A DNA stretch of 64,000 nt from IMGVR_UViG_3300044644_001125:186001-250000; one strand, 5' to 3'. Counted from the first letter of the stretch, positions 38,297-62,605 are shown. The notes: generated from the sequence alone by a model not told the origin. Translations and numbers: made by a program.

Positions 38297-38383
38297 ATGA
38301 AAATGTTTTACACTCTTACTTTTATCGCATTCTTATTTGTTTTCGCTTTTATGCTTGCTGATTTTCTTACGGACTTCGAATGA
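38297..38383 (+). CDS. 28-aa hydrophobic peptide
   Basis: AGGAG SD; MKMFYTLTFIAFLFVFAFMLADFLTDFE; ATGA-coupled to the next gene. Confidence 0.55.
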   Translation: MKMFYTLTFIAFLFVFAFMLADFLTDFE

Positions 38384-38673
38384 ACATCGAAATAGCACCT
38401 ATTGAATTCCAAAAAGAGTTGAGCTGGGAAGATGCCAGGTTGTACTGCTTTTCGTTTACTATTGATGGGAAAATTGGATGGCGTTTACCTACCAATAAGG
38501 AACAAGAGTTTCTAAAATCACAAAACATTGAAAGTTCCGATGAATGGTATTGGACTTCTAACGACGATGGCGACTGGGTAGTATGCTACAACTGGCATTC
38601 CGAACTGGGATCTCATAGCTTTAAAGAACACATTCGTTACGCTAGACCAGTGAGAGATCTAAAAGATAATTGA
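38380..38673 (+). CDS. DUF1566/Lcl-like paralog 1
   Basis: EIAP..SW..A..YC...IDGKIGWRLPT..WYWTS..RPVR. Confidence 0.8.
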   Translation: MNIEIAPIEFQKELSWEDARLYCFSFTIDGKIGWRLPTNKEQEFLKSQNIESSDEWYWTSNDDGDWVVCYNWHSELGSHSFKEHIRYARPVRDLKDN

Positions 38674-38717
38674 ATCAACGCGAGCACCGCTAGGTGCGAG
38701 CTATCAAGGAAAACAGT

Positions 38718-39056
38718 ATGAACATCGAAATAGCACCAGAAAAGTATTGGACTCGCCTATCCTACGATGAAGCAGTATTCTATTGCTTCACGCTAGGTTA
38801 TCGTTTACCAACCGAAAAAGAATTCCTTGAACTCTCAGTTGCTGAATTTAGATTTGAAGGGCCTTATTGGTCTAGTGAACCTCCTCGTCTTGAGTTCAGA
38901 TATGTTTATATTAACTTACAAAAAGGCAGAGGTGGTTGCACCAGTTCACGTGTTAGTAGTAAATGTTTGGTTTTGCCAATTAGAACTAAACAACCTATTC
39001 TCAAAACGCCAAATCTTTTCAAACGGATTATTAACAGACTATGTACATCGAAATAG
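38718..39056 (+). CDS. DUF1566/Lcl-like paralog 2 (divergent)
   Basis: EIAP, YC..LGYRLPT, YWSS, VLPIR. Confidence 0.75.
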   Translation: MNIEIAPEKYWTRLSYDEAVFYCFTLGYRLPTEKEFLELSVAEFRFEGPYWSSEPPRLEFRYVYINLQKGRGGCTSSRVSSKCLVLPIRTKQPILKTPNLFKRIINRLCTSK

Positions 39057-39394
39057 CACCACCCGAATATCAGGTTAAAATGCCACAAAATACAGCAAAG
39101 ATGTATTGTTTCTCCCTTAACATTGACGGTAAGGTAGGCTGGCGTGAACCAACCACAGATGAATTGCATAAGATTTCGAAATCTATAGATTATGATGAAT
39201 GGATTTCTAACCGTGGTTTTTGGAGTTCCGATGGTTATACTATCTTACGTGATTGTTGGTCATTTCCTTGGTCACTTATCAATGACTACGAACTTAATAC
39301 TCCACGTTTGGTAGTCCCAGTTAGAACCCTACCAGAAGTCGGTTGGTTTGGTAGGTTGATCTACAAATGGAACGGATATAGAGAAATCCTATGA
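39041..39394 (+). CDS. DUF1566/Lcl-like paralog 3 (divergent)
   Basis: YCFSLNIDGKVGWREPT, FWSS, VPVR. Confidence 0.75.
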   Translation: MYIEIAPPEYQVKMPQNTAKMYCFSLNIDGKVGWREPTTDELHKISKSIDYDEWISNRGFWSSDGYTILRDCWSFPWSLINDYELNTPRLVVPVRTLPEVGWFGRLIYKWNGYREIL

Positions 39395-39726
39395 ACTTTG
39401 AAACAGCACCGAAGTCAGCAGTAATTGAAGCAAACTACGATGATGCCAGATTCTACTGTATGGCAAACATTGAGGGTAAAACAGGTTGGAGATTACCAAC
39501 TATGGATGAATTGAATCAAATATACCTTGATAATCGATTACAGGTGCAAAAGTTTGAACCAGTTTGTTACTGGTCATGCACTCCGTATAATGTACTCGAT
39601 AACCCAGTTTTTGACAAAGCCGTTTGGACTCAAGATTTCAGAAAAGGATTCCAAACGTATTGCATACCAGGCAAAAACAATATACCATACAATAGGTATT
39701 TTGTATTACCTGTTCGTGATCTCTAA
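39391..39726 (+). CDS. DUF1566/Lcl-like paralog 4
   Basis: GKTGWRLPTMDEL, YWS, VW.QDF..G, VLPVR. Confidence 0.8.
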   Translation: MNFETAPKSAVIEANYDDARFYCMANIEGKTGWRLPTMDELNQIYLDNRLQVQKFEPVCYWSCTPYNVLDNPVFDKAVWTQDFRKGFQTYCIPGKNNIPYNRYFVLPVRDL

Positions 39727-39752
39727 AAGATAATTAAACCAAGGAATCTAAC

Positions 39753-40040
39753 ATGAAAAGCATTGACGTATACAAACCAACCCACGATGATTGGTACCCT
39801 TCATACCAAGTAGAAGGTTGGGATAACCTACAACTTGTTTGTGTTTCCTTTATTCAGACTGGTCCAGATCCAGCAAGGGGGAATGGCCAATGGCGTGTTT
39901 GCGTTTGGGGTGCAGATGATTGCGGTATGGAAAGAGACTACGACGATCGCAGTGAAGCTATGACTATGTTCTATCGCGTTATCAGTTGGGAGTTTGTAGA
40001 CCTTAAGTTGCTACGTGAACATGGGTTTGTTAGTGCATGA
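39753..40040 (+). CDS. hypothetical protein
   Basis: AGGA SD; unrelated to its neighbours. Confidence 0.65.
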   Translation: MKSIDVYKPTHDDWYPSYQVEGWDNLQLVCVSFIQTGPDPARGNGQWRVCVWGADDCGMERDYDDRSEAMTMFYRVISWEFVDLKLLREHGFVSA

Positions 40041-40330
40041 AATATGAAATCGCGCCTAAATCCACTGAAACCTATTTAAATTGGGGTGATGCCCGTTTGT
40101 ATTGTTTTGCTCTTAATATCGATGGAAAAACCGGTTGGCGATTGCCTACTATCAATGAACTTATCGAAATCTATTATTCGCAACATGATTTAAGAATGGA
40201 TAATTACTGGTCATCTACAGTTGCATGTGACGATACCTACGCAGAAATGTTTGCATTTCACAGGCATATCGAACGTAGAGGTTCAAAATCATGGGGTCAA
40301 TACGTTAGAGCAGTTAGGTCTATTGCTTGA
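40037..40330 (+). CDS. DUF1566/Lcl-like paralog 5
   Basis: GWRLPT..EL, YWSST, YVRAVR. Confidence 0.85.
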   Translation: MKYEIAPKSTETYLNWGDARLYCFALNIDGKTGWRLPTINELIEIYYSQHDLRMDNYWSSTVACDDTYAEMFAFHRHIERRGSKSWGQYVRAVRSIA

Positions 40331-40431
40331 GGTTTATTGCTGGTTTTGGGTTATTATTGTGTGTTGCGAGCACCGCTAGGTGCGAGCTTGTTATAATGAA
40401 AAGGGCCCACATGCGTGAGCCCCATTATCTT

Positions 40432-41595
40432 TTAATCCAACCGTTTACATTTCCAGCCGCCTCGATGGGTTTCTCTAACGCCATTGGAAACTTTTTGCAT
40501 ACCTCGGTATGATAAATTATTATCTTTACAGAATTGACGCATATCACCAACTTTGAAAACTTCACCTTGTGGGTTAATGACATCCCAGTAAACTGGTGTT
40601 CGTTCAACTCGATAATTGATACAGGTCCAACCATGATAATGGCGTTGAGAACCAGATGCCACTTTACACATAGCAGAATAACTAAGGTCATGTTCTACAC
40701 AAAACTTTTTAAAATCATCTGGACAATGGACATTGCCATCTGGGTCAGTGGCCTCCCATTTACACATAGTCGTCAGTCGTTCCGTTTCTAAATGCTTACA
40801 CTTCCAACCACGATGTGTATCTTGTCTGCCATTTGATACGTCTTTCATACACCCTGGATTCAATCCATTTTCTCTACAAAAACGTTCAAGATTTTTAATT
40901 TGAAATACAACACCTAACGGATTTGTAAGTTCCCAATGTTGATCGTGAGGATGATCCATCGTGTTTTTATCCAGCTTCACTTTGGTATTTTTGCGAATCA
41001 CTTCTTCACGAACCTCTTGTGGCGTGCTCAAACACACGCAAGTCCATCCTTTGTGATTCGTTATTTTTCCTTTATCAACCGCATTCATACATGATCGATT
41101 TAACCCGTTGTCCCTGCAATATTTTTCAAGATTGTTAATCTCAATAACTTCGCCGGTTGGAGATGTCAATCTCCAGCGTTTAGTTGCTCGAATCTTCGTA
41201 ACCGTGTTGTTTTTCAACCTAGTTTGATACCCTTTCTTCGCACTCTTACTGGTAGTAACAAATTTCACAGTACCACCATTGTCAACACAATGTTTATTCA
41301 ATGAAAGTGGTTCTTTTCGATGTTTCTTGATGATATCCTGTTCGTACCAATAAACCGCATCAACGTCAGTAGATTCAAATATAATCTCATATTCAAATGC
41401 ACCTTTCCCGTATTCATCGATTAATGCTTCGACATAAGTACTACTAGTAAAGTAGTAAATCCAAAAATCATCTTTTGGTAGTCGTTTTCGATCGATATTT
41501 AATTTACGGTATCCGTAATAGAACTGACCTGTTGGTTTGCATACAAGTTTATACACGTATGCTGGCACACCCGTGCCGTTTTGATAAATACTCAT
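40432..41595 (-). CDS. free-standing GIY-YIG/Seg-like homing endonuclease with repeated C-terminal DNA-binding modules
   Basis: YVYKL....G.FYYGYR...YFTSS; four W.L..P.G....NL..FC..NGL...M..V..G...H.GW.C units; TATAAATA at 41653-41660 (minus). Confidence 0.75.
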   Translation of the reverse strand: MSIYQNGTGVPAYVYKLVCKPTGQFYYGYRKLNIDRKRLPKDDFWIYYFTSSTYVEALIDEYGKGAFEYEIIFESTDVDAVYWYEQDIIKKHRKEPLSLNKHCVDNGGTVKFVTTSKSAKKGYQTRLKNNTVTKIRATKRWRLTSPTGEVIEINNLEKYCRDNGLNRSCMNAVDKGKITNHKGWTCVCLSTPQEVREEVIRKNTKVKLDKNTMDHPHDQHWELTNPLGVVFQIKNLERFCRENGLNPGCMKDVSNGRQDTHRGWKCKHLETERLTTMCKWEATDPDGNVHCPDDFKKFCVEHDLSYSAMCKVASGSQRHYHGWTCINYRVERTPVYWDVINPQGEVFKVGDMRQFCKDNNLSYRGMQKVSNGVRETHRGGWKCKRLD

Positions 41596-41703
41596 GCTGA
41601 TGTTTCCTCTAAATGTTAGATTGGTTGGGCTTTACCGAGCCGCGAACCTACTACTATTTATACGGAATACAAAAAAGAGCCCGTTAAGGCTCTTTTTTTC
41701 ACA

Positions 41704-42138
41704 TCAAGAATCTAATTGTTTACATGTCCATCCCTTGTGACTTTTCCTAACTCCCCGTGATACCTTTCCCATAGTAGACGGATCTAAGCCATTTTCTTTA
41801 CAAAACAGTTCAAGATTACGTATTGTGAATGTGTTGCCTTCAGAATTAGTTAATTCCCAAGTTTTGGTATTAGCCTCGTTTGCAGCTGCCATTGATAAAT
41901 TACCATTTGCAATCCGCGATGCCAATGATTTCTGCGCATTTTCTTTGGTTATCCCACGTTCTCTACAAGTTATCGCAGCTTTATCAGCAGCTATCTGAAA
42001 TGTTCCGTTATTAGTTTTAGTAACTTTTGCTTTTGCCGCACCGGTCACATACGAGTTATTAGCCAATCTAGTTTCACGGATCTTTTGTCCAACTGTTTTA
42101 GTTTCTGCTGTGGTTTCTGTATCTTCAGTCATGTTCAC
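41704..42138 (-). CDS. endonuclease-associated repeat-domain protein without nuclease domain
   Basis: One copy of the same W.L...G..F..NL..FC..NGL module. Confidence 0.65.
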   Translation of the reverse strand: MNMTEDTETTAETKTVGQKIRETRLANNSYVTGAAKAKVTKTNNGTFQIAADKAAITCRERGITKENAQKSLASRIANGNLSMAAANEANTKTWELTNSEGNTFTIRNLELFCKENGLDPSTMGKVSRGVRKSHKGWTCKQLDS

Positions 42139-42236
42139 CTCTGATTAATATTCAAAAAGAATTCATATTATACTATATATTCGCGAGGCACGCTAGTGCC
42201 GAGCCATTGAAAAAGGGCCCGAAGGCCCTTTCTTGG

Positions 42237-43793
42237 TTAATCATCTTCACCATAATATCGCAATACTTCTGCAACGACCTTTGATCTTTCAATATCAGAA
42301 TGATTAAAATGAACAATCGAGATTGCTGAATCTGCTTCCTTTGCACTTTCATACAATTCCATGAAATTCCTCAATCCATTACGATCACCCCTATCACTCT
42401 GCGCTAAATCACCCGTAATTATCAATTTACTCGACGAAGCTATTCGAGTAAGAAGCATTTTCATTTGATTGGGTGTGGTTAACTGCGCCTCATCTGCAAT
42501 AATAACTGAATTCTGTAAGTTTCGCCCTCTAAGGCACCCTATTAATGCAAATTCAATAACTTTTTCATTGACATAATGATTTACCGTATCTGGACTCCAA
42601 TTATCTTCAAGTATATCAACGATGCTCAATACATACGGTTCGATTTTATCACGTACTCCGCCCGGTAAGGCACCAATAATTTCATCAGTAGCGTATAGCG
42701 GTCTAGCAATCACCAGTTTATCATATTTTCCCTTTTTTAACTGATCAATTCCATACTGCACTGCTAATAAAGTGTTGTGATTCACAATAAACTCATCAGT
42801 AACATACAGATGATCCTCACTATCAATCAAGATACACTGACATTCTTCCATCTCAGCTTCTACAACTGAGAGCACTGGCATTAACTCTAAAGGACTCTCA
42901 ACGATACTAAACCGAATATGAACACCAGTGTCTTTGATACAAGCAGAACCACCGATAGAACGAACTAAGTAGACAACCGAGTCTTGTAACAAGGCACCAG
43001 CAGTAAAGACTAGGTTACCAGAATCGACAGCATGGATGCTGGTATCGAGTAGACCTTGTAGTAATTTAACTTTTTGTGAACGAGAAGCGTTGAGATATTC
43101 CGCTGGGATAGCTTTATCGTCTTTTAAAAGCATAGTACCTAATTGGAAAGGGTCGATTGGTAGTTCTACATCGTCCATGATTTCGTGTTTAGGTAGGCGA
43201 ATATAAGGCATAATAGAGCCATGATAACGCAGTTTAAGTAGTTCTAGCGTATTGATGACTGCAGGTTTATTATCAATGAATACTTCCCATAGGTGTTCTG
43301 CGCAGGCTAGAGTAGAACGACCATCGTGCAAGGTGATTGAATACGTTTGTTTACTACCTTGTGGGAATAAGCCGACGACATTAGCGGTATTACCATCAGG
43401 AGTAGTGACTTTATCACCTACTGCGATATCACCCATAGTAGTCCACCCGCCAGGGATTTTGATTTTGGAGGTTAGCGGTTGAGCTTTACCAGTACCAGCT
43501 GGACCGATAGCAAAAACAATTTGTTTTTTAGGATTGTTAAGTTCCATTAAGTATTGTTCTTGGCTAAGGTTTTTGGGGTGAATTTGAACCCGTTTACGTT
43601 TAGCAGCCAACCGTTGATCGATTGACATTTGTTGTGGGTCTGGTTGTTGCTGGTGGTTTTGTTGATGGGACTGCTGGTGATTTCTACTGGAGTTTTTACT
43701 ACGGGCTTTTTTGCTTTGGGGTGGGGTGTTTGGTTCATGCGTTTCGTTGAAATACTCGCGTGAATCCGTGTGTCTTGATCTTTTTCTCGTCAT
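42237..43793 (-). CDS. phoH: PhoH-family ATPase with intein
   Basis: GPAGTGK|...|TLLA, IARP, GALPG, RGR, IIADEAQ, RI, ITGD..QSD, DIERS. Confidence 0.92.
   Translation of the reverse strand: MTRKRSRHTDSREYFNETHEPNTPPQSKKARSKNSSRNHQQSHQQNHQQQPDPQQMSIDQRLAAKRKRVQIHPKNLSQEQYLMELNNPKKQIVFAIGPAGTGKAQPLTSKIKIPGGWTTMGDIAVGDKVTTPDGNTANVVGLFPQGSKQTYSITLHDGRSTLACAEHLWEVFIDNKPAVINTLELLKLRYHGSIMPYIRLPKHEIMDDVELPIDPFQLGTMLLKDDKAIPAEYLNASRSQKVKLLQGLLDTSIHAVDSGNLVFTAGALLQDSVVYLVRSIGGSACIKDTGVHIRFSIVESPLELMPVLSVVEAEMEECQCILIDSEDHLYVTDEFIVNHNTLLAVQYGIDQLKKGKYDKLVIARPLYATDEIIGALPGGVRDKIEPYVLSIVDILEDNWSPDTVNHYVNEKVIEFALIGCLRGRNLQNSVIIADEAQLTTPNQMKMLLTRIASSSKLIITGDLAQSDRGDRNGLRNFMELYESAKEADSAISIVHFNHSDIERSKVVAEVLRYYGEDD
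42774..43484 (-). mobile_element. intein in PhoH Walker A (237 aa, Ala1, class-3-like)
   Basis: GK|AQPLTSKIKIPGGW...ACAEHLW...CQCILID...VNHN|T; decayed LAGLIDADG-like LLQGLLDTS. Confidence 0.9.
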
Positions 43794-43965
43794 GCTTTGA
43801 AGTCCTTTTTGGTTGAAGTTTGAACTGCGTTAAGTACTGCACTGCTTGTATTTAGTTATTGGATAGGTTATGATATGCCACGGCTCGCACCTATCGGTGC
43901 TCGCGACAATACACAATAATACAGGCTCGCGAGAATACAATGCAATACAATACAGTAATATATGC

Positions 43966-43993
43966 TTGACATCAGTTATCTTTTAGTTATAAT
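43966..43993 (+). promoter_or_regulatory. sigma70-type early promoter, Lcl cluster 2
   Basis: TTGACA-TCAGTTATCTTTTAGT-TATAAT; near-identical copy at 50432. Confidence 0.85.
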
Positions 43994-44021
43994 ACGCAAA
44001 ACTCAACTAATAGGAACCAAC

Positions 44022-44288
44022 ATGAAATACTATCAACATACTGTTTACATACGCGAAGATTCCACTGGGTTAACTGCGCATCGTAACGCAGGCGATTCAG
44101 AATGGGGTGAAATAGAAAGCTGTTCTGAAAAACTAGATGTGGTTTGGGTTTGTTGTAATGAGTTTGGTAAGGAAATACATAAAATATACGACAATCGTAT
44201 AGATGCTGAGTCTTATGCCTGTTCTTGCAATCGCTTTAGAGGCGATGATTCTGAAAACGTAATTGTAGAATGTTTGGAAATCCTATGA
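44022..44288 (+). CDS. hypothetical protein
   Basis: AGGA SD, ATG 44022. Confidence 0.65.
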   Translation: MKYYQHTVYIREDSTGLTAHRNAGDSEWGEIESCSEKLDVVWVCCNEFGKEIHKIYDNRIDAESYACSCNRFRGDDSENVIVECLEIL

Positions 44289-44578
44289 ACTTTGAAATAG
44301 CACCAAAAGAAACCGAGATCCAAGCCAACTGGGATGATGCCCGATTGTATTGTTTTGCTCTTAATATTGATGGTAAGACTGGATGGAGATTACCAACCAA
44401 AGACGAATTGAATGAAATATATCAATCAAAAAATGATTTTGAGGAGGAATGGTATTGGTCCTCTACTGAGTGCAATGACGATAACGCCTGGGGTCAGTGT
44501 TTCTACGGCGGAGCCCATTCCGACGGCGATAAGAACTACGGCGACATCTACGTTAGAGCAGTTAGAGATATAACATGA
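44285..44578 (+). CDS. DUF1566/Lcl paralog 6 with DGR-type variable region
   Basis: WSSTE-CNDDN-AW-GQC-F-YG-G...K...YVRAVR; NNC/NNT codons. Confidence 0.88.
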   Translation: MNFEIAPKETEIQANWDDARLYCFALNIDGKTGWRLPTKDELNEIYQSKNDFEEEWYWSSTECNDDNAWGQCFYGGAHSDGDKNYGDIYVRAVRDIT

Positions 44579-44865
44579 AATTCGAAATAGCACCAAAATC
44601 GACTGAAATCCGAACCAACTGGGATAATGCAAGATTGTATAGTTTCTTTCTTACAATCGATGGAAAATCAGGATGGAGGTTACCTACTAAAAACGAATTT
44701 AGTGAAATTTGGAAATCCGATAACGATTTCGATGGTTGGTATTGGTCTTCGACCGAAATTGATACCACACGCGCCTGGGTAAAAAGTTTCTTGTCAAACA
44801 GTTTTCACAAGGCAAATAAACTTGATGATAAGATTATAACTAGGTTAGTTCGGGATTTACTATGA
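44575..44865 (+). CDS. DUF1566/Lcl paralog 7
   Basis: GWRLPT, YWSSTE, AW..SF. Confidence 0.85.
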   Translation: MKFEIAPKSTEIRTNWDNARLYSFFLTIDGKSGWRLPTKNEFSEIWKSDNDFDGWYWSSTEIDTTRAWVKSFLSNSFHKANKLDDKIITRLVRDLL

Positions 44866-45158
44866 AATTCGAAATAGCACCAAAAGAAACCGAGATACTA
44901 GCCAACTGGGATGATGCCAGATTGTATTGTTTTGCTCTTCGTATAGATGGTAAAACAGGATGGCGGTTGCCAACCAAGAAAGAGTTGAATATAATGGTTG
45001 ATTTTCTCAATGGTAATGATTATTATTGGACTAGCGAAGAATGGGGTGATGTAAGCATTTGGGTTCAAAAAGGCTTCGCGTATCGAGGAATTCACCACCA
45101 GTTTCATGCCCATCGTGAAAGTAAAAATAAGGTTAGAGCCGTGAGATCTAAAAGATAA
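44862..45158 (+). CDS. DUF1566/Lcl paralog 8
   Basis: GWRLPT, YWTS, VRAVR. Confidence 0.82.
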   Translation: MKFEIAPKETEILANWDDARLYCFALRIDGKTGWRLPTKKELNIMVDFLNGNDYYWTSEEWGDVSIWVQKGFAYRGIHHQFHAHRESKNKVRAVRSKR

Positions 45159-45379
45159 TGAAATCAAAAATTGAAATAGCACCTACATCAGAAAATTGGT
45201 TATCATACGATGAGGCATTGCTATATTGCTTTGCCTTGAACATCGATGGTAAGATTGGATGGAGAATGCCAACTGACAAAGAATTTCAATACCATTATAA
45301 CATACGAGGATGGTACTTAAATGAGCAATGTCCAGAACCATTACCCGTAACACCAGTGCGAGATCTAAAAGATGATTGA
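45158..45379 (+). CDS. DUF1566/Lcl paralog 9 (internally shortened)
   Basis: YCFALNIDGKIGWRMPT, TPVRDLKD. Confidence 0.75.
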   Translation: MKSKIEIAPTSENWLSYDEALLYCFALNIDGKIGWRMPTDKEFQYHYNIRGWYLNEQCPEPLPVTPVRDLKDD

Positions 45380-45602
45380 AATAGCACCTGAAGTATATTG
45401 GAAAAAGTTAAACTATTACGAGGCAATCATGTACTGCTTTAGTCTGAATATTGATGGTAAAATAGGTTGGAGATTACCTAATAGTGTTGAATACGAACTT
45501 ACTGAAAAAACTGGATGGGTAGTTGAAGACTTGCACACTTTTCCCAATACTTTTAAGTTACGTGTTCAGTTTTTAACAACCCCAGTGCGAGATATAACAT
45601 GA
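45372..45602 (+). CDS. DUF1566/Lcl paralog 10 (shortened)
   Basis: YCFSLNIDGKIGWRLP, TPVRDI. Confidence 0.75.
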   Translation: MIEIAPEVYWKKLNYYEAIMYCFSLNIDGKIGWRLPNSVEYELTEKTGWVVEDLHTFPNTFKLRVQFLTTPVRDIT

Positions 45603-45862
45603 ACTTTGAGTTTGCAAACGAGAAATATTGGAAAGATTTGACATTCGATGAAGCTAAGATGTATTGCTTCTCTCTTACGATTAATGGTAAGACTGGTTGG
45701 AGATTACCGACTAGTGCAGAACATGCCTTAATTGGTGTGACTCTGTGGGAACAATTTAATCAACTGAGAAGTTCATGCTATCTTTTTTGGGATAGTGAGA
45801 GTGAAAGTAATACCACTGAAGTTTCGAATACCATACCAGTGCGAGATATAATCGATGATTGA
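45599..45862 (+). CDS. DUF1566/Lcl paralog 11
   Basis: YCFSL.INGKTGWRLPT, IPVRDI. Confidence 0.75.
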   Translation: MNFEFANEKYWKDLTFDEAKMYCFSLTINGKTGWRLPTSAEHALIGVTLWEQFNQLRSSCYLFWDSESESNTTEVSNTIPVRDIIDD

Positions 45863-46106
45863 AGTAGGAAAACCACCAGAAAACCGAATGTCGTATGTAG
45901 ATGCTGTGTTGTATTGTTTTTGTTTAGGTGATGGTTGGAGACTGCCAACCCTTGACGAATACAAAGCCATTGAACATGTTATGTGGTACCAAAATGATGA
46001 TTTACAAGATAGTCCCTGTGAATTTCACGTAATACCAGTTAGAGATATTGAACCTACTATGATTAATAGAATACTTTGTCTGATTCACCCAAGGTTTAAA
46101 AGATGA
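45855..46106 (+). CDS. DUF1566/Lcl paralog 12 (shortened)
   Basis: YCFCLGDGWRLPT, IPVRDI. Confidence 0.72.
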   Translation: MIEVGKPPENRMSYVDAVLYCFCLGDGWRLPTLDEYKAIEHVMWYQNDDLQDSPCEFHVIPVRDIEPTMINRILCLIHPRFKR

Positions 46107-46396
46107 TTGAAATAGCACCTAAAGAATATTGGAAAACTGACTTGAATTGGTACGAAGCCAAGATGTATTGTTTTTGTCTTGATATAGATGGTAAAACCGG
46201 TTGGCATTTGCCTGATATGAATTATTTCCACACAAACAAAGTCACACGAGCTGTCAATGATTGGTACTGGACTTCCGAGGACCTTGGATCGGATGCAATG
46301 CAAGTGCGTCCATACGGAATGCACTTTATCGAATGGGACAAGAATGATGCTGGACCTGCTGTTACTATGCCGGTAAGAGATCTAAAAGATAATTGA
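46103..46396 (+). CDS. DUF1566/Lcl paralog 13
   Basis: YCFCLDIDGKTGWHLP, WYWTS, MPVRDLKD. Confidence 0.78.
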   Translation: MIEIAPKEYWKTDLNWYEAKMYCFCLDIDGKTGWHLPDMNYFHTNKVTRAVNDWYWTSEDLGSDAMQVRPYGMHFIEWDKNDAGPAVTMPVRDLKDN

Positions 46397-46649: not shown

Positions 46650-47092
46650 TGCTCGTCGAATTACTAGATAGAACATAGAAAGACGAGAGAATTGCTAAGA
46701 AAGCCGCGCACAGGCGACCATTACGTGCCCTTAAACCCTAGTCTACTTGTCACATAGGGGATGGAAGTTCCGAATTTAGCAACGGAGATGTAACTCACTA
46801 CCCCACCAGATGAGTTATGGGATATGCCTTCATACAACCCATTTGAGTTACAGCAAAAAGATATAACAAAGGCTAAAGATGGGTTGAGAAAACCCGCGTT
46901 TGTTGGATGAGGTAGCAGTTGTTCAGCAAGCCACCGTCAGATTAATAAGACTGAGCTCGAGGTACCGGCTGACCGCCTCTGTAATGCTCTACTGCTGCTG
47001 TGATGCGATACTTGTACGCAGAACCTTTCATAGTTGTTCCATGAAAGTGCTTTGAATTAACCCGAGTTTTTCGGGTTAAGATGTTCCGCTCC
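46650..47092 (+). ncRNA. candidate large structured non-coding RNA
   Basis: ORF-free, GC-richer; stems CCCTA/TAGGG, TCCG/CGGA, GTAACTCA/TGAGTTAC, GGGTT/AACCC, GTAGCAGT/ACTGCTGC, TCAG/CTGA, GAGG/CCTC, TGCG/CGCA, CTTTCAT/ATGAAAG, TTAACCCGA/TCGGGTTAA. Confidence 0.6.
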
Positions 47093-47159
47093 ACATACCG
47101 CAGTATTAAAAGCCTCTATTATTAAAGCTATTAATGATTCTATTATAAATCTATTATTG

Positions 47160-49554: not shown

Positions 49555-49563
49555 TTTGGGAAT

Positions 49564-50361
49564 ATGGATTACTACAAGATTTTAGGTTTATCGCGTGGCG
49601 CATCGGCTGATGAAATAAAGAAAGCCTATCGCTCACTGGCAATGAAACATCACCCAGACCGAGGTGGTTCTGAAGAACAATTTAAAGACATTGCAACGGC
49701 TTATGAAGTCTTAAGTGACCCAGTTAAAAAACAACGGGTTGATAATGGACAAGATCCAAATGGACCTGAACCGCAATTCAATGGTGGATTTAATCCATTT
49801 GAATTTTTCCATGGCGGTGGTCCTCATGGGTTTCATCACGTACAACGTAATACCAGTCTTTCTATCCATGTAGAAGTTTCACTTGAAGAAGTACTAACTG
49901 GTAAATCATTTGATGCTGACTTGGCTTACCCATCTGGTCAGAAGAAAACGATTAAACTTGAAGTTCCTGCTGGTGTGTTACATGGTCAGCAGATTCGATA
50001 TCAAGGTCTGGGTGATGATTCGATTGCTGGTATTCCTCCTGGTGATTTGATTGTTAATATTAACATTAGACCTCATCGAATGTTTAGACGTGAAGGTGAT
50101 GCGCTAGTAGTTGAAAAAACCATATCAGTTTGGGATGCTCTTTTAGGTACTAAACTTGAAATTCATACCCTAGATGACAGAACGCTAAACCTGACAATCC
50201 CAGCTGGTATCCAACCAGAAACTGTTTTAAGTTGTAATGGTGAGGGATTGCCTAATATGCAAACTAAACGTCGTGGTAATCTTTTGATTAAAGTTAAAAT
50301 CAAGATACCCAAAGACTTAACACCAGATCAAATACTGCACATACAAGCAGTTGCTACTTAA
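49564..50361 (+). CDS. dnaJ: DnaJ-class molecular chaperone without zinc finger
   Basis: DYY.ILG, HHPDRGG, F..I..AYEVLSD; DnaJ_C GDL.V.I...H..F.R.G. Confidence 0.92.
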   Translation: MDYYKILGLSRGASADEIKKAYRSLAMKHHPDRGGSEEQFKDIATAYEVLSDPVKKQRVDNGQDPNGPEPQFNGGFNPFEFFHGGGPHGFHHVQRNTSLSIHVEVSLEEVLTGKSFDADLAYPSGQKKTIKLEVPAGVLHGQQIRYQGLGDDSIAGIPPGDLIVNINIRPHRMFRREGDALVVEKTISVWDALLGTKLEIHTLDDRTLNLTIPAGIQPETVLSCNGEGLPNMQTKRRGNLLIKVKIKIPKDLTPDQILHIQAVAT

Positions 50362-50431
50362 ATTCAATACCCAGCTATAGTCTGGGTATTCTTTTATTAG
50401 GCTCGCACCTAACGGTGCTCGCAAATAATGG

Positions 50432-50459
50432 TTGACATCGGTTATCTTTTAGTTATAAT
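50432..50459 (+). promoter_or_regulatory. sigma70-type early promoter, Lcl cluster 3
   Basis: TTGACA-TCGGTTATCTTTTAGT-TATAAT. Confidence 0.85.
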
Positions 50460-50484
50460 ACGCAAAACTTAACCGGAGGCAATC

Positions 50485-50685
50485 ATGAGAAAATCCCTAT
50501 CACATAAAGAAATCTTAATGCTAAAACTCGATAATCTTTTAGCGACTGCTGAATCACTCGAGGACAAACTCGTAACCGAGAATAATCAATGGCAATATCG
50601 TGCAACCGTCCTACGTAGCGATATTCAAAATTTGATTGACTATGTAGAATGGTCGGTTGAAGAGGCTGAACATCATGAACTTTGA
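50485..50685 (+). CDS. small coiled-coil hypothetical protein
   Basis: GGAGG SD. Confidence 0.6.
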   Translation: MRKSLSHKEILMLKLDNLLATAESLEDKLVTENNQWQYRATVLRSDIQNLIDYVEWSVEEAEHHEL

Positions 50686-50968
50686 AATAGCACCTAAATC
50701 AACTGAGATACAAGCCAATTGGGATAATGCCAAGTTGTATTGCTTTTCTCTCAATATCAATGGAAAAACTGGATGGAGATTACCTACCAAAGACGAACTA
50801 GATGAAATATACCAATCCGAAAATGATTTTAGGAATACATTTTACTGGTCATCTACTGTGGGTAATGGCAACGGCGCCTTGGCTCAGAGTTTCCGCACTG
50901 GCAAACAGTATGACGCCAGTAAGGACAGCGGCGGCGGCCACGTTAGAGCCATTAGGGATTTAACATGA
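50675..50968 (+). CDS. DUF1566/Lcl paralog 14 with DGR-type VR
   Basis: NNC/NNT-patterned 3' end. Confidence 0.88.
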   Translation: MNFEIAPKSTEIQANWDNAKLYCFSLNINGKTGWRLPTKDELDEIYQSENDFRNTFYWSSTVGNGNGALAQSFRTGKQYDASKDSGGGHVRAIRDLT

Positions 50969-51261
50969 AATACGAAATAGCACCTAAATCAACTGAAACA
51001 AGATTAACATGGGAAGAAGCTAGAATGTATTGCTTTTCTCTTAATATCGATGGTAAGATCGGATGGAGATTACCCACTAAAGAAGAACTCAACGAGATTT
51101 ATGAATCAGTAAACGATTTCGAGAAGGCTTGGTACTGGTCCTCTACTGAGAACAATGGCAACACCGCCTGGAGTCAGGGTTTCAACGGTGGCTACCGGAG
51201 CAACGGCGGCAATAAGGTCAACGGCCTTAACTACGTTAGAGCCATCAGATCAATCCCTTAA
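50965..51261 (+). CDS. DUF1566/Lcl paralog 15 with DGR-type VR
   Basis: gag aac aat ggc aac acc gcc tgg agt cag ggt ttc aac ggt ggc...aat aag gtc aac...tac gtt aga gcc. Confidence 0.9.
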   Translation: MKYEIAPKSTETRLTWEEARMYCFSLNIDGKIGWRLPTKEELNEIYESVNDFEKAWYWSSTENNGNTAWSQGFNGGYRSNGGNKVNGLNYVRAIRSIP

Positions 51262-51349
51262 CCTTTAGTATTTTTTGCGAGGCATAAAGCCTAAAAGATG
51301 ATTAATAATAATGCGAGCACCGTTAGGTGCGATTCAATAGGAAAACCAA

Positions 51350-51640
51350 ATGAACTTTGAAATAGCACCTAAATCAACTGAGATAAAAGCAAATTGGGAT
51401 GATGCCAGATTATATTGCTTTGCTCTTAATATAGATGGTAAGACTGGATGGAGATTACCAAATAAAGAAGAATTGAATGAAATCTATGAATCCGAAAATG
51501 ATTTTAGGAATACATTTTACTGGTCATCTACCGAGAACGATGACAGCAACGCATGGATGCAGTCCTTCAACAGTGGTGGTCAGACCTTCAACCTCAAGAG
51601 CATCGACATACTCTACGTTAGAGCAGTGAGAGATATATGA
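51350..51640 (+). CDS. DUF1566/Lcl paralog 16 with DGR-type VR
   Basis: NNC/NNT-patterned 3' end. Confidence 0.9.
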   Translation: MNFEIAPKSTEIKANWDDARLYCFALNIDGKTGWRLPNKEELNEIYESENDFRNTFYWSSTENDDSNAWMQSFNSGGQTFNLKSIDILYVRAVRDI

Positions 51641-51930
51641 ACTTTGAAATAGCACCTAAATCAACTGAGATCCAAGCCAATTGGTATGATGCCAGATTAT
51701 ATTGCTTTGCTCTTAATATAGATGGTAAGACTGGATGGAGATTACCTACCTTAGAAGAATTAAATGAAATTTATGAATCAGAAAATGATTTTGAAAAATG
51801 GGGATATTGGTCTTCTACTGAGAGCAGTGGCGACTACGCCTGGAAGCAGAATTTCAACGGTGGCAACCAGTACACCGGTAATAAGAACTACGGCGGCTAC
51901 TACGTTAGAGCCATCAGATCAATCCCTTAA
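51637..51930 (+). CDS. DUF1566/Lcl paralog 17 with DGR-type VR
   Basis: cag aat ttc aac ggt ggc aac cag tac acc ggt aat aag aac tac. Confidence 0.9.
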   Translation: MNFEIAPKSTEIQANWYDARLYCFALNIDGKTGWRLPTLEELNEIYESENDFEKWGYWSSTESSGDYAWKQNFNGGNQYTGNKNYGGYYVRAIRSIP

Positions 51931-52019
51931 CCTTTGGTATTTTTTTGCGAGGCATAAAGCCTAAAAGATGATTAATAATAATGCGAGCACCGCTAGGTGC
52001 GATCCAATAGGAAAACCAA

Positions 52020-52313
52020 ATGAACTTTGAAATAGCACCTAAATCAACTGAAATTAGACTAAACTGGTTTGATGCCAAGTTGTATTGCTTTGCTCTTAAC
52101 ATAGATGGTAAGACTGGATGGAGATTGCCAGATGAAGAAGAACTCAACGAGATTTATGAATCAGAAAACGATTTCGTTGGTAACTACTACTGGTCCTCTA
52201 CTGAGATCAATAGCTACCTTGTCTGGAGTCAGAGTTTCAGTAATGGCGATCAGGGCAACAGCTCTAAGTACTACGGCTCTGTCTATGTTAGAGCCATCAG
52301 ATCAATCCCTTAA
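52020..52313 (+). CDS. DUF1566/Lcl paralog 18 with DGR-type VR
   Basis: NNC/NNT-patterned 3' end. Confidence 0.9.
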   Translation: MNFEIAPKSTEIRLNWFDAKLYCFALNIDGKTGWRLPDEEELNEIYESENDFVGNYYWSSTEINSYLVWSQSFSNGDQGNSSKYYGSVYVRAIRSIP

Positions 52314-52400
52314 CCTTTTGGCTTTTTGCGAGGCATAAAGCCTAAAAGATGATTAATAACATTGCGAGCACCGCTAGGTGCGAGCCAATAGGAAAACCAA

Positions 52401-52712
52401 ATGAAATTTGAAATAGCACCCAAATCAACAGAGATTCGAGCCAATTGGTATGATGCCAGATTATATTGCTTTGCTCTTAACATAGATGGTAAGACTGGAT
52501 GGAGATTACCAAATAAAGAAGAATTGGATGAAATATACCAATCCGAAAATGATTCCGAAAATGATTTCGAAATTGGTTGGGATTGGTATTGGTCCTCAAC
52601 TGAGTACAATGATGACTTAGTCGTCTGGATTCAGTATTTCTATAATGGGCTTCAGAATAACGGTAAAAAGAACAGCCGCAGCGGATACGTTAGAGCCATC
52701 CGAGATATCTAA
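52401..52712 (+). CDS. DUF1566/Lcl paralog 19 with DGR-type VR
   Basis: Patterned 3' end; duplicated SENDSEND upstream. Confidence 0.88.
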   Translation: MKFEIAPKSTEIRANWYDARLYCFALNIDGKTGWRLPNKEELDEIYQSENDSENDFEIGWDWYWSSTEYNDDLVVWIQYFYNGLQNNGKKNSRSGYVRAIRDI

Positions 52713-52734
52713 ATTTTAATTAAATGGTAGACAA

Positions 52735-53415
52735 ATGAATATTAATCAAGAAATTGCAAGAGTAAAATATCGCCTTAGTAAATTAGAACAACAGCGAGAT
52801 GAATTCCGGAGTATGTTTTTACCAAACAATCGTGATAACAAGGTTGATTGTAATTATAACAAAAACCGTGTTGATAAATGGAGACTGCCTAATGTCTCTA
52901 ACTACGAAGTTAAAGAATGGTTAATTAACCTTGCATACGGTGTGCGTTCAAAATTCGTGACCGCTGATGAATTAATGCATAAATTGCACTCATTGCCTAC
53001 CGAGGTGCATGAGCGTATAATGTGGCACGCAAGTACTGATGGTGGGCAATGTTTCGAAGATCTGTTTAGTGGTGATAGTTCACCTGTTACTGAATCCGCT
53101 GCAAGTGAATCGAATTTTGAAATAGCCCCAAAATCAACCGAAGTTAAAACTAATTGGTACTATGCCAAACTGTATTGTATTGCTCTTAATATCGATGGAA
53201 AGACTGGTTGGCGTATGCCATCTAAAGAAGAACTAAATCAGATATACGAATCTGAAAATGATTTTGAGAAGGATTGGTATTGGTCATCCACTGAGGCTAT
53301 TGGTGAACAAGGTCATGGTGATTATGCTTGGTATCAGCATTTTGGTCCATATCCGGTACCGGACTTCTACAAGAAGTCTTACAAAAGATACATTAGAGCT
53401 ATCAGATCAATATAG
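52735..53415 (+). CDS. DUF1566/Lcl paralog 20 fused to a ~125-aa unrelated N-terminal domain
   Basis: Lcl domain starts at NFEIAPKSTE. Confidence 0.82.
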   Translation: MNINQEIARVKYRLSKLEQQRDEFRSMFLPNNRDNKVDCNYNKNRVDKWRLPNVSNYEVKEWLINLAYGVRSKFVTADELMHKLHSLPTEVHERIMWHASTDGGQCFEDLFSGDSSPVTESAASESNFEIAPKSTEVKTNWYYAKLYCIALNIDGKTGWRMPSKEELNQIYESENDFEKDWYWSSTEAIGEQGHGDYAWYQHFGPYPVPDFYKKSYKRYIRAIRSI

Positions 53416-53443
53416 TTCTCGCGAACCAAACAGGAGACAAAAA

Positions 53444-53740
53444 ATGAACTTTGAAATAGCACCTAAATCGACTGAGATACAAACCAACTGGGAAGAAGCT
53501 AGAATGTATTGCTTTTCTCTTAATATCGATGGTAAGATCGGATGGAGATTGCCAACTAAAGAAGAACTAAACGACATTTATGAATCAGAAAATGATTTTG
53601 AAGAATGGTACTACTGGTCCTCTACTGAGTCCAATGGCTCAAAAGCATGGTTTCAGAATTTCAACGTTGGCCACCAGAGCAGTCACGGCGTTAAGAACAA
53701 CGGCAACATCTACGGTAGAGCCATTAGAGATTTACTATGA
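53444..53740 (+). CDS. DUF1566/Lcl paralog 21 with DGR-type VR
   Basis: AGGAG SD, ATG 53444; patterned 3' end. Confidence 0.9.
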   Translation: MNFEIAPKSTEIQTNWEEARMYCFSLNIDGKIGWRLPTKEELNDIYESENDFEEWYYWSSTESNGSKAWFQNFNVGHQSSHGVKNNGNIYGRAIRDLL

Positions 53741-54042
53741 ACTTTGAAATAGCACCTAAATCAACTGAGATCCAATCCAATTGGGATGATGCCAAGTTGT
53801 ATTGTTTTTCCCTTAATATCGATGGTAAGACTGGATGGAGATTACCTACCAAACAAGAACTGAATGAGATATACCAATCAGAAAATGATTTTGAAAACAA
53901 TTGGTATTGGTCCTCGACCGAGTACTCCTCGACTGAGTACGATGGCATCTTCGTCTGGTATCAGAATATGTCAAACGGAGTTCAGTACAACCGTACTAAG
54001 AACGGCAGCTACTACGTTAGAGCCATTAGATCAATCACTTAA
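53737..54042 (+). CDS. DUF1566/Lcl paralog 22 with DGR-type VR
   Basis: 15-nt tandem duplication (SSTEY x2) at the VR start. Confidence 0.9.
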   Translation: MNFEIAPKSTEIQSNWDDAKLYCFSLNIDGKTGWRLPTKQELNEIYQSENDFENNWYWSSTEYSSTEYDGIFVWYQNMSNGVQYNRTKNGSYYVRAIRSIT

Positions 54043-54056
54043 CCTTTTGGATTATC

Positions 54057-54350
54057 ATGAACTTTGAAATAGCACCAAAATCAACTGAGATAAAAGCAAA
54101 TTGGGATGATGCCAGATTATATTGCTTTGCTCTTAACATAGATGGTAAGACAGGGTGGCGTATGCCATCTAAAGAAGAACTCAACGAGATTTATGAATCA
54201 GTAAACGATTTCGAGAAGGCTTGGTACTGGTCCTCTACTGAGAATAATGGCAACTACGCCTGGGATCAGTTTATGTCGAATGGCTACCAGGCCAGCGGCA
54301 ATAAGAACTACGGCACCTTCTACGTTAGAGCAGTTAGATCAATCCCTTAA
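54057..54350 (+). CDS. DUF1566/Lcl paralog 23 with DGR-type VR
   Basis: Patterned 3' end followed by a hairpin at 54365. Confidence 0.9.
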   Translation: MNFEIAPKSTEIKANWDDARLYCFALNIDGKTGWRMPSKEELNEIYESVNDFEKAWYWSSTENNGNYAWDQFMSNGYQASGNKNYGTFYVRAVRSIP

Positions 54351-62604: not shown

Positions 62605-62605
62605 T

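What the first reader, a model, noticed from the sequence alone, without database searches (positions are those of the whole stretch)
38380..54350. 23-gene array of stand-alone Lcl/DUF1566 domains, ten with a DGR adenine-mutagenesis signature
Seen: 23 paralogs of ~70-120 aa in three clusters (5, 8 and 10 genes). In ten of them (44285, 50675, 50965, 51350, 51637, 52020, 52401, 53444, 53737, 54057) the ~80 nt after TGG TCN TCN ACN switches from AT-ending codons to NNC/NNT codons. Positions 1-2 vary freely while position 3 is held. The CAG before F/M and the later AAG are invariant in 10/10. The codon after AAG is NNC in 10/10, the codon after CAG is NNT in 9/10, and the codons before CAG and AAG are NNT in 8/10 each. 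Established: DGRs (Bordetella BPP-1 paradigm) copy an AAY-rich template with A-specific errors into C-terminal variable regions of C-type-lectin-fold proteins, and DUF1566 is such a target family. Inference: this phage keeps a library of at least ten simultaneously diversified mini-binders. They have no tail-fibre fusion and no signal peptide, and sit behind early sigma70 promoters. That fits intracellular roles (host-protein binders, anti-defence decoys) better than the usual receptor tropism switching. Caveat: the As in CAG and AAG are invariant, which needs purifying selection to explain.
Basis: partly seen in the sequence, partly recalled or inferred. Interest (0 to 1): 0.95.

Follow-up and report, generated by a model that had tools for sequence, protein, structure and literature searches.

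The report
Frozen retroelement-made lectin-fold binder library
A 327-kb phage carries about 80 tiny lectin-fold genes, and a dozen still show the codon scars of a mutagenic retroelement (DGR), but no retroelement was found and the "variable" tips are inherited unchanged, so this looks like a once-randomised binder library frozen into the genome, not one being diversified now.

Summary
The window holds 23 stand-alone Lcl_C/DUF1566 genes in clusters of 5, 8 and 10. Ten have a C-terminal ~80 nt of NNC/NNT codons (third-position C 54% vs 16% upstream, A 4% vs 36%). Variation sits at the adenine positions of genuine DUF1566-type DGR templates (pi 0.55 vs 0.18, p=4e-8).

A DGR origin is well supported. 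The claim of ten simultaneously diversified targets is not.
- No reverse transcriptase, Avd or template repeat lies in the window or in the 68% of the 327-kb contig I could read.
- Template-type patterns scanned over the whole contig hit only the variable regions (VRs).
- Every VR pair differs at 15-28% of non-adenine scaffold sites (0.7% in 115 real template-VR pairs). Lengths differ too, so they cannot share a template.
- The same VRs recur unchanged in independent assemblies whose N-terminal halves differ by up to 10 residues.

The family has about 80 members genome-wide. They range from fresh to fully ameliorated VRs, and relatives show array-size changes and chimeras.

Each cluster follows a perfect sigma70 promoter. 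That fits early expression, but function is inferred only. The invariant CAG/AAG adenines are normal for this VR class.

The parts
38380..40330 (+). Cluster 1: five divergent DUF1566 mini-genes (38380, 38715, 39041, 39391, 40037) plus one unrelated 95-aa ORF (39753-40040). None has the fresh VR codon signature.
44285..46396 (+). Cluster 2: eight mini-genes. Only the first (44285) has a fresh VR. 45158, 45372, 45599 and 45855 are short VR-less forms ending in PVRD.
50675..54350 (+). Cluster 3: ten mini-genes. Nine have DGR-type VRs (52401 is the weakest). 52735 is a 226-aa form with an N-terminal extension and an ameliorated VR. The array includes repeated gene-plus-spacer units.
44456..44578 (+). 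VR of 44285. It is identical in related contig L003 although the N-terminal 171 nt are only 95% identical.
50846..50968 (+). VR of 50675
51136..51261 (+). VR of 50965 (one codon longer)
51521..51640 (+). VR of 51350. It is unchanged in 5 cluster members whose N-termini differ by up to 7 residues.
51808..51930 (+). VR of 51637
52191..52313 (+). VR of 52020. Its relative in L004 differs by 4 ordinary point changes.
52590..52712 (+). VR of 52401 (weakest signature, extra codon)
53615..53740 (+). VR of 53444 (one codon longer). It is nearly unchanged in L004 and in 6 cluster members.
53908..54042 (+). VR of 53737 (five-codon duplication STEYS). It shows 0-3 changes in 9 cluster members from about 20 contigs.
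54228..54350 (+). VR of 54057. It is identical in P0011, whose N-terminus differs at 9 residues (a chimera).
38244..38271 (+). Perfect sigma70-type promoter (TTGACA-N16-TATAAT) heading cluster 1
   Evidence: 5 in window, 0.07 expected
43966..43993 (+). Perfect sigma70-type promoter heading a small leader ORF and cluster 2. It is near-identical to the one at 50432.
50432..50459 (+). Perfect sigma70-type promoter heading leader ORF 50485-50685 and cluster 3
51262..51349 (+). About 90-nt spacer repeat. Copies also lie at 51931-52019 and 52314-52400, with a partial copy at 54351-54390. Each carries the hairpin word GCGAGCNCC-NNTA-GGNGC and marks tandem duplication units.

Best explanation
Statement. 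The genes are a large, hard-wired family of minimal C-type-lectin-fold (Lcl_C/DUF1566) binding modules in a T4-like jumbo phage. About 80 copies are seen, 23 of them in this window. The ligand-facing C-terminal loops of about a dozen were once randomised by a diversity-generating retroelement (DGR). AAY-rich template codons were copied with adenine-specific errors, which left NNC/NNT codons.

The retroelement is no longer linked to these genes. Each randomised tip has been fixed, is inherited stably and is kept by purifying selection. The family now changes by ordinary means:
- point mutation, with drift towards the phage's AT-rich codons
- tandem duplication and loss of gene-plus-spacer units
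- recombination between paralogues, which reshuffles N-terminal halves onto conserved tips

Shown: family membership and fold, the adenine-site pattern, the absence of RT and TR in what was read, the incompatibility of the VR scaffolds, and the stability of the VRs.

Inferred: the clusters are transcribed early by host sigma70 RNA polymerase, and the products act as a fixed repertoire of small cytoplasmic binders of host or competitor molecules. A role as virion-attached or lysis-released adhesins is the main functional alternative.
For: DGR origin.
- The window VRs are in the same register as genuine DUF1566-type templates that have an RT about 0.8 kb downstream and VRs differing only at template adenines.
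- Using 83 real templates to define A sites, window VR diversity is 0.545 at A sites and 0.175 at other sites (Mann-Whitney p = 4e-8).
- Composition at positions 1 and 2 of the VR-core codons, where most template adenines lie, is A>G>T>C in the window. Real VRs show the same order at their template-A sites.
- The CAG adenines are kept in 114 and 113 of 115 real VRs. AAG is likewise retained in every real VR displayed.

No live element.
- No YxDD / G..SQ reverse-transcriptase motif, no RVT or Avd Pfam hit and no A-tolerant template match was found in the window or in the 221,649 bases (68%) of the contig read.
- The best non-VR template candidate has at least 23 non-A mismatches in 102 nt.
- A scaffold-only pattern scanned over all of IMG/VR hit this contig only at three VRs. 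This excludes a cognate template anywhere on the contig for 52020, 54057 and the gene at contig 324,529.
- Template-specific patterns hit only VRs on this contig, yet found real templates elsewhere.

Frozen state.
- Every pair of six in-register VRs differs at 7-13 of 46 non-A sites. In real template-VR pairs the rate is 0.7%.
- VR lengths differ (120-135 nt).
- VR third-position diversity (0.30) is about equal to upstream (0.33). A control array in another phage gives 0.07.
- The VR of 44285 is identical in L003 at 95% N-terminal identity. L009, L012 and L013 carry identical VRs although they come from three samples.
- In 90% clusters the VR shows 0-3 changes while N-termini differ by up to 10 residues.

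Decay series and turnover.
- Paralogues keep the AW.Q.F..G.Q...K motif but with AT-ending codons.
- Array size is 10 genes here against about 6 in L004.
- Chimeras include P0011, and P0071 against P0072.

Early expression. Three of the five perfect sigma70 promoters in the window head the three clusters.
Against: - The first 81.6 kb and about 21 kb around 268-289 kb of the contig were never read directly. Part of the second gap is covered only by a near-identical Logan contig. An RT could sit there.
- My template patterns are not fully sensitive. A real related template (L055) escaped two of three of them.
- Metagenomes hold hundreds of distinct VRs on very similar N-terminal halves, and VR divergence is saturated even between the closest N-termini. 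Ongoing diversification somewhere in the population would also produce this.
- The cluster-member evidence is biased, because 90% clusters can only contain similar VRs.
- No read-level data could be examined.
- Timing and function are inferred from promoter consensus only.
- The structure model is of moderate confidence. One of five AF2 models reached pLDDT 74; the others were about 40.
Confidence: 0.6

Rival explanations
1. A live DGR encoded by this phage currently diversifies ten or more of these genes at once.
For: - The codon signature is fresh (C3 up to 0.67, A3 about 0) in a 38% GC genome.
- The VR pool in metagenomes is very large.
- Multi-target DGRs exist, with eight tandem targets reported in Stenotrophomonas (PMC5758913).
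- Another phage's five-gene array has homogeneous scaffolds.
- 32% of the contig is unread.
Against: - No RT, Avd or TR was found in 68% of the contig, which includes +/-10 kb around each VR-bearing cluster that was located.
- Whole-contig pattern scans found no template.
- The VR scaffolds differ pairwise at 15-28% of non-A sites and in length, so at least six different templates would be needed.
- The VRs are identical across samples while their flanks diverge.
Confidence: 0.06
2. Episodic or trans diversification. A DGR carried by only some members of the phage population, by a co-infecting phage or by the host occasionally rewrites a subset of these VRs. The alleles seen here are the selected survivors.
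For: - A classical siphophage DGR (L057: tail genes, 242-aa target, Avd, TR, RT) comes from samples with IMG/VR numbers close to those of the jumbo-phage relatives (3300046000-46313 against 3300046010/46011).
- L057 has similar GC content.
- Its template is in the same register as the window VRs over their first about 78 nt.
- The best metagenomic template is only 4 non-A mismatches in 84 nt from the VR of 51637.
- VR divergence is saturated between near-identical N-termini.
Against: - No template among 378 fetched loci is cognate. The best candidates have 4-18 non-A mismatches in 84-87 nt depending on the VR, against 0-2 in real pairs.
- The 3' priming region differs (GTT AGA GCC ATC AGA against GTC AGA GCT GTT CGG).
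- The swaps actually observed carry changed tails or 5'-side changes. That pattern fits recombination, not 3'-anchored retrohoming.
Confidence: 0.13
3. No DGR was ever involved. The NNC/NNT pattern and the excess change at positions 1 and 2 come from diversifying selection and codon preference on a lectin loop.
For: - Positions 1 and 2 evolve faster than position 3, which is also what positive selection gives.
- Each VR is now under purifying selection.
Against: - Selection does not explain third positions switching from 36% A to 4% A over exactly this stretch.
- It does not explain codon-by-codon register with real AAY-rich templates.
- It does not explain the A>G>T>C composition at positions 1 and 2 of the VR codons, which matches the order seen at template-A sites of real DGR VRs.
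Confidence: 0.04
4. Functional rival. The products are extracellular-acting adhesins. They decorate the virion or are released at lysis and bind host surface glycans, giving a fixed multi-specific receptor repertoire.
For: - Every characterised relative binds at a cell surface. Lcl-CTD is a trimeric glycosaminoglycan-binding head (PMC11162425).
- Phage DGR targets sit on tail fibres (L057).
- PHROG 4245 aligns these genes to the C-terminus of a 583-position family.
- Virion proteins need no signal peptide.
Against: - There is no anchoring domain. The 97 residues are the lectin domain alone.
- Strong sigma70-consensus promoters, and neighbours that are replication and nucleotide-metabolism genes, fit early rather than late expression.
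Confidence: 0.3

Closest known systems
DGR target proteins of the DUF1566/CLec2 class (category 'd' of Wu et al. 2018, PMC5758913; type example Legionella LdtA)
   Same: - Same Pfam family, with the VR at the C-terminus.
- Same conserved frame W..(x5)AW.Q.F..G.Q....K, encoded as NNY codons around fixed TGG/CAG/GGN/AAG.
- About half of the known targets are also short, domain-only proteins.
   Different: Known members sit with an RT, an accessory gene and a template that matches the VR at all non-A sites. Here none of these is found, the VRs differ from one another at scaffold sites, and they are stably inherited.
Classical siphophage DGR cassette L057 (IMGVR_UViG_3300046313_000122) and its near-identical relatives L055, L064 and L067
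   Same: - Its template is in the same codon register as the window VRs over the first about 78 nt, with the same flanking TGG TCT TCT ACT GAG and TAC GTN AGA GC.
- GC content is similar, and its samples have IMG/VR numbers close to those of the jumbo-phage relatives.
   Different: - Its target is a 242-aa tail-module protein with an N-terminal domain.
- Avd, TR and RT are present.
- Its template differs from the window VRs at 6-9 non-A sites in 84 nt and in the 3' priming region. The window VRs also have one more codon after AAG.
Legionella pneumophila Lcl C-terminal domain (PDB 8Q4E)
   Same: It is the best sequence match (E 1.6e-9) and the best fold match (TM 0.71, 30% identity) for the predicted structure. 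It is a C-type-lectin-like fold without disulfides or Ca sites.
   Different: Lcl is a secreted, collagen-stalked trimeric adhesin of a bacterium and is not a DGR target. The phage proteins are the bare domain, with no stalk and no export signal.
Multi-target DGRs (Stenotrophomonas, eight tandem targets; Treponema, seven remote targets) and the five-gene array in phage contig L020
   Same: Tandem arrays of small paralogous targets with DGR-type VRs.
   Different: In those systems the VR scaffolds are uniform. In L020, VR third-position diversity is 0.07 and the 3' flanks are identical. In the window, scaffold divergence equals the neutral divergence of the rest of the gene.
Lineage-specific gene-family expansions in jumbo phages (for example about 35 zinc-ribbon copies in Bacillus phage G; PMC7824862)
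   Same: Dozens of small paralogues in tandem arrays in a >300-kb phage genome.
   Different: That survey of 224 jumbo phages reported no C-type-lectin (FGS) domains at all. The family here is about 80 strong and carries retroelement-made diversity.

Membership tests
Diversity-generating retroelement (complete, active system) | DGR-clade reverse transcriptase gene | tested here: not met
   No YxDD with G..SQ motif and no RVT Pfam hit in the window or in the 68% of the contig read. The same motif scan found an RT next to 17 of 21 control templates. Contig 1-81.6 kb and most of 268-289 kb were not read directly.
Diversity-generating retroelement (complete, active system) | Template repeat that matches the VR except at template adenines | tested here: not met
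   A-tolerant scans give at least 23 non-A mismatches in 102 nt for any non-VR site. Whole-contig pattern scans hit only VRs. The best template among 378 fetched loci has 4-18 non-A mismatches in 84-87 nt, depending on the VR.
Diversity-generating retroelement (complete, active system) | Accessory protein (Avd or HRDC) | tested here: not met
   No such Pfam family appears among the called genes of the regions walked. The L057 control has a 119-aa Avd-sized gene between target and template.
Diversity-generating retroelement (complete, active system) | VR hypervariable between closely related genomes or within a population | tested here: not met
   VRs are identical or differ by 0-4 ordinary changes between related contigs and cluster members, while N-termini differ more. 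Control phages with one identical template carry different VRs. Read-level data were not available.
Diversity-generating retroelement (complete, active system) | IMH-type 3' element with a downstream hairpin at each VR | tested here: inconclusive
   A conserved TAC GTT AGA GCN RTY AGA block ends each VR. A GC-rich hairpin repeat follows some genes at 6-50 nt, but it also occurs away from VRs and is missing after five of the ten.
DGR-type variable region (product of adenine mutagenesis) | Variation concentrated at template-adenine positions of AAY codons, with A-poor fixed positions | tested here: met
   Diversity is 0.545 at A sites against 0.175 elsewhere, p = 4e-8; 28 of 32 A sites vary. Third-position A is 4% against 36% upstream. 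However, 22 of 46 non-A sites also vary.
Lcl_C / DUF1566 (PF07603) | Pfam profile match at or above the gathering score | tested here: met
   44.6-55.6 bits (cut-off 34.9) for 44285, 50675, 51637, 52735 and 54057. Cluster-1 and cluster-2 divergent members score 15-27 bits and join only through the family profile.
Lcl_C / DUF1566 (PF07603) | C-type-lectin-like fold | tested here: met
   AF2 model pLDDT 74, pTM 0.67 (only one of five models was confident). Foldseek top hit is 8Q4E Lcl-CTD, E 1.6e-5, TM 0.71, followed by C-type-lectin-like domains.

The most novel reading that the evidence does not exclude
The family is a two-speed system. A DGR carried as an accessory element by some members of this phage population, or by a co-infecting phage, occasionally re-randomises individual mini-genes. 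Useful tips are then fixed, duplicated and exchanged as cassettes. The phage lineage would thus own an open-ended, early-expressed repertoire of intracellular binders, with far more targets than any DGR described.
Probability: 0.13. Interest if true: 0.9.

Novelty: new variant of a known kind. Interest (0 to 1): 0.6.

Why it matters
DGRs are known as engines that keep rewriting one or a few genes. Here the output of such an engine appears to have been captured as inherited genes. A dozen different randomised tips are each conserved across samples, inside a family of about 80 lectin-fold modules that takes up about 7% of the sequence read from this giant phage.

This gives a natural example of retroelement-made diversity becoming a germline multigene repertoire. 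It offers a dated decay series from fresh to ameliorated variable regions. It also puts C-type-lectin domains into jumbo phages, where a 224-genome survey found none.

If the proteins are early cytoplasmic binders, each conserved tip should have a specific host or defence target that can be fished out.

Tried and rejected
- Megablast of cluster 3 and of a 3.6-kb gene against GenBank phages gave no match. tblastn gave one weak hit.
- RT-based locus search with the L057 RT returned 59 loci, none from jumbo contigs. The peptide words it used were specific to that RT, so this is weak evidence.
- The genome-contig scan found only distant DUF1566 genes in MAGs and gave no host clue.
- At first I read the difference between 54057 and its L004 counterpart as DGR-like hypervariation. 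The mismatch profile shows the whole gene differs, so it is a paralogue replacement.
- Proteins with near-identical N-termini and unrelated VRs looked like population hypervariation. Changed tails, crossovers inside the VR and chimeras point to recombination, and the cluster data show the VRs are the conserved part.
- The T4 late-promoter word is depleted in the window, so it gave no timing contrast.
- The hairpin repeat is not specific to VR ends, so I rejected it as a DGR cruciform.
- One look-up failed because I guessed the wrong start codon.

Full report
SOURCE AND SETTING

The window is positions 186,001-250,000 of IMGVR_UViG_3300044644_001125, which is the same record as JGI Ga0453730_0000006 (327,256 bp). 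It is a T4-like jumbo phage at about 38% GC. Its genes include:
- a clamp loader
- ribonucleotide reductase carrying an intein
- a split ClpB-type ATPase and DnaJ
- further along the contig, DNA polymerase B, ligase, a gp25-like baseplate protein and giant fibre genes

No GenBank phage is close.

THE OBSERVATION

All 23 ORFs are present, in clusters of 5, 8 and 10. Pfam Lcl_C scores above its cut-off for the cluster-3 type genes. The divergent members score below it but are joined by a family profile.

In the ten genes, the roughly 26 codons after TGG TCN TCN ACN GAG have third positions C 54% / T 24% / G 18% / A 4%. Upstream in the same genes the figures are C 16% / A 36% (p about 1e-28). Diversity by codon position is 0.45/0.48/0.30 in this stretch and 0.14/0.10/0.33 upstream.

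So the pattern is real and far beyond chance. One correction is needed. Third positions are unusual in composition, but they are no more conserved than third positions elsewhere in these genes.

IS IT A DGR SIGNATURE?

Yes. I searched IMG/VR and JGI metagenomes with IUPAC patterns built from the invariant bases, with A at the variable ones. These returned many genuine DGR cassettes. Each has an A-rich template of the form GCN TGG AAY CAG AAY TTC AAC AAT GGN AAC CAG AAC AAC AAC AAY AAG. An RT lies about 0.8 kb downstream, and the VRs differ from the template only at its adenines.

One of these, L057, is a textbook siphophage cassette: tape measure, tail proteins, a 242-aa target, an Avd-sized gene, the template and a 372-aa RT. 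Its template is in the same register as the window VRs over their first about 78 nt.

I took 83 distinct real templates to define adenine sites. The window VRs then have diversity 0.545 at those sites and 0.175 at the others (Mann-Whitney p = 4e-8).

In 115 real template-VR pairs, the VR base at template adenines is A 55%, G 20%, T 18%, C 8%. Positions 1 and 2 of the window's VR codons show the same ordering.

The adenines of the two CAG codons are retained in 114 and 113 of the 115 real VRs, and AAG is kept in the real VRs displayed. Their invariance is therefore a property of this VR class. Gln and Lys cannot be encoded without A, so selection presumably removes the variants.

The fold is as expected. 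A profile of 49 homologues matches Legionella Lcl-CTD (8Q4E) at E 1.6e-9. An AF2 model (pLDDT 74, pTM 0.67, one confident model of five) has 8Q4E as its best structural match (TM 0.71). C-type-lectin-like domains follow. Lcl-CTD is a trimeric glycosaminoglycan-binding head (PMC11162425).

IS A DGR ACTING ON THESE GENES NOW?

Four independent lines say no.

(1) Components.
- The window has no ORF with RT motifs, no RVT or Avd domain and no template-like sequence.
- I walked the contig with all twelve exact-protein look-ups. I now hold 221,649 bases (68%): 81,639-129,256, 129,684-166,819, 169,139-268,106 and 289,330-327,256. A near-identical Logan contig stands in for about 268-278 kb.
- None of the called genes has an RT or Avd Pfam hit, and the motif scans are empty.
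- An assumption-free A-tolerant scan with twelve fresh VRs finds nothing better than 23 non-A mismatches in 102 nt.
- A scaffold-only pattern run over the whole of IMG/VR, and hence the whole contig, hit this contig only at three VRs. So 52020, 54057 and the gene at contig 324,529 have no cognate template anywhere on it.
- Three template-specific patterns likewise hit only VRs here.

(2) Incompatible scaffolds.
- Any two of six in-register VRs differ at 7-13 of 46 non-adenine sites (15-28%). This is about the same as the third-position divergence of their N-terminal halves (21-47%).
- VR lengths run from 120 to 135 nt.
- Real template-VR pairs differ at 0.7% of such sites.
- A five-gene array in another phage (L020) serves as a positive control for recent templating. 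Its VR third-position diversity is 0.07, and its 3' flanks are identical.

(3) Orthologue stability.
- The VR of 44285 is identical in L003, although the first 171 nt of the gene are only 95% identical.
- The VRs of 53444, 53737 and 52020 differ from their L004 counterparts by 1-4 ordinary changes, some at third positions.
- L009, L012 and L013, from three samples, carry identical VRs.
- By contrast, control phages that share one identical template carry unrelated VRs.

(4) Population sample.
- Exact copies of nine of the ten proteins are on record; eight of the nine were seen on 2-3 contigs and one (53444) on the source contig only.
- Their 90% clusters contain members from JGI, ENA and Logan in which the VR shows 0-3 changes while the N-terminal 57 residues differ by up to 10.
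- The tips are therefore the conserved part, and the N-terminal halves are what gets exchanged.

WHAT THE FAMILY LOOKS LIKE GENOME-WIDE

A profile of the 23 genes finds about 80 members in the 68% of the contig read. About a dozen have fresh VRs (C3 at least 0.5, A3 at most 0.08).

Others keep the protein motif AW.Q.F..G.Q...K but spell it with AT-ending codons, for example CAA and AAA in place of CAG and AAG. That is what amelioration of an old VR would give.

A short subfamily of about 70-85 aa lacks the VR loop altogether. It forms a tandem array of more than 15 genes at 157-161 kb.

Turnover is visible in three ways:
- Cluster 3 has ten genes here and about six in the syntenic contig L004.
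- Gene-plus-90-nt-spacer units are repeated.
- Chimeric proteins occur.

Between the most similar neighbours (50675 and 51350), adenine sites differ at 24 of 32. Scaffold and N-terminal third positions differ at only about 23-24%. The randomisation therefore happened after or around the duplications, and then stopped.

EXPRESSION AND FUNCTION (INFERRED)

Five perfect TTGACA-N16-TATAAT promoters occur in the window, against 0.07 expected. Three of them head the three clusters, and two of those three are near-identical.

The proteins have no hydrophobic N-terminus or lipobox and no domain beyond the lectin fold. PHROGs gives only families of unknown function.

I therefore favour early, host-polymerase-driven expression of a fixed repertoire of small cytoplasmic binders. 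The alternative is virion-attached or lysis-released adhesins. All characterised relatives act at cell surfaces, so I keep that alternative at about 0.3.

COMPARISON WITH WHAT IS KNOWN

DUF1566/CLec2 is an established DGR target class, and half of its members are domain-only proteins (PMC5758913). The most tandem targets reported there is eight.

A survey of 224 jumbo phages found no C-type-lectin (FGS) domains (PMC7824862). No paper in the searchable library links DUF1566 with jumbo phages.

What is new here is the combination:
- a very large stand-alone family in a jumbo phage
- DGR-made tips
- no retroelement found
- conservation of each tip

I cannot file this as a DGR, because RT, template, accessory gene and hypervariability were all tested and not met. 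It is best described as the fixed product of one.

LIMITS

- 32% of the contig was not read directly.
- The pattern scans can miss atypical templates.
- Cluster data are biased towards similar sequences.
- No reads were available.
- The structure model is of moderate confidence.

I put the frozen-library explanation at about 0.6, episodic or trans diversification at 0.13, and a live cis DGR on these ten genes at about 0.06.

Noticed in passing
window 46703-46853 (+): Rfam RF01718 Polynucleobacter-1 RNA, 68.3 bits (gathering 37), full-length match. It lies in the ORF-free gap after cluster 2, just downstream of two GGTTGACA-type promoters (46404, 46487). It may hint at a freshwater betaproteobacterial host.
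   Followed up: no
window 38172, 38680, 40366, 43887, 50405, 51313, 51983, 52364, 54365, 59261, 59329: Hairpin repeat GCGAGCNCC-NNTA-GGNGC, 11 copies against 0.04 expected. Nine lie at the borders of, or inside, the DUF1566 clusters, often just upstream of the perfect promoters. Its role is unknown; it could be a terminator, a processing site or a recombination site.
   Followed up: partly
L020:5076-6778 (IMGVR_UViG_3300020185_004330) and L021: A different phage has five tandem 107-aa DUF1566 genes whose VR scaffolds are uniform (third-position diversity 0.07) and whose 3' flanks are identical. This looks like a live multi-target DGR array. No RT or template lies in the 10 kb fetched.
   Followed up: partly
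contig 157,193-161,245 (L247:5572-9531): Tandem array of more than 15 overlapping 68-90-aa genes of the short, VR-less subfamily (…GWRLPT…PVRDLKDD). Neighbouring genes overlap by 8 nt, start on stop.
   Followed up: partly
window 6825-9401; 42237-43793 (-); contig about 255.9-258.1 kb: Inteins are present in the RNR large subunit (Pfam) and in DNA polymerase B (Pfam, weak). The PhoH-like ATPase has an insert right after its P-loop that ends in HN. That last point was read by eye only.
   Followed up: no
window 54530-58578: The ClpB-type ATPase is encoded in two pieces (54530-56107 and 57340-58578). A 383-aa minus-strand ORF with no Pfam hit (56085-57236) sits between them, and a perfect sigma70 promoter lies at 57273.
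   Followed up: no
window 61226-63418 and contig to about 250.8 kb: Four ART-PolyVal (ADP-ribosyltransferase-like) genes lie in a five-gene run, interrupted by one gene carrying only a faint DUF3008 hit.
   Followed up: no
window 4171-5694, 18770-20455; contig about 171.1-172.2 kb: Mtd_N (the N-terminal domain of the BPP-1 DGR target Mtd) occurs on a pectate-lyase-like protein, on a 561-aa repeat protein and on a collagen-repeat protein. None has a VR.
   Followed up: no
contig about 172.5, 182.5, 137, 252.9 kb (L246, L252, L250): At least four IS605 OrfB/TnpB (Cas12f-like TNB) genes are scattered in the phage genome.
   Followed up: no
window 40432-41595 (-) and 41704-42138 (-): A GIY-YIG/HNH-type homing endonuclease has four internal repeats of a roughly 60-aa DNA-binding module. 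A shorter paralogue sits between cluster 1 and the PhoH gene.
   Followed up: partly
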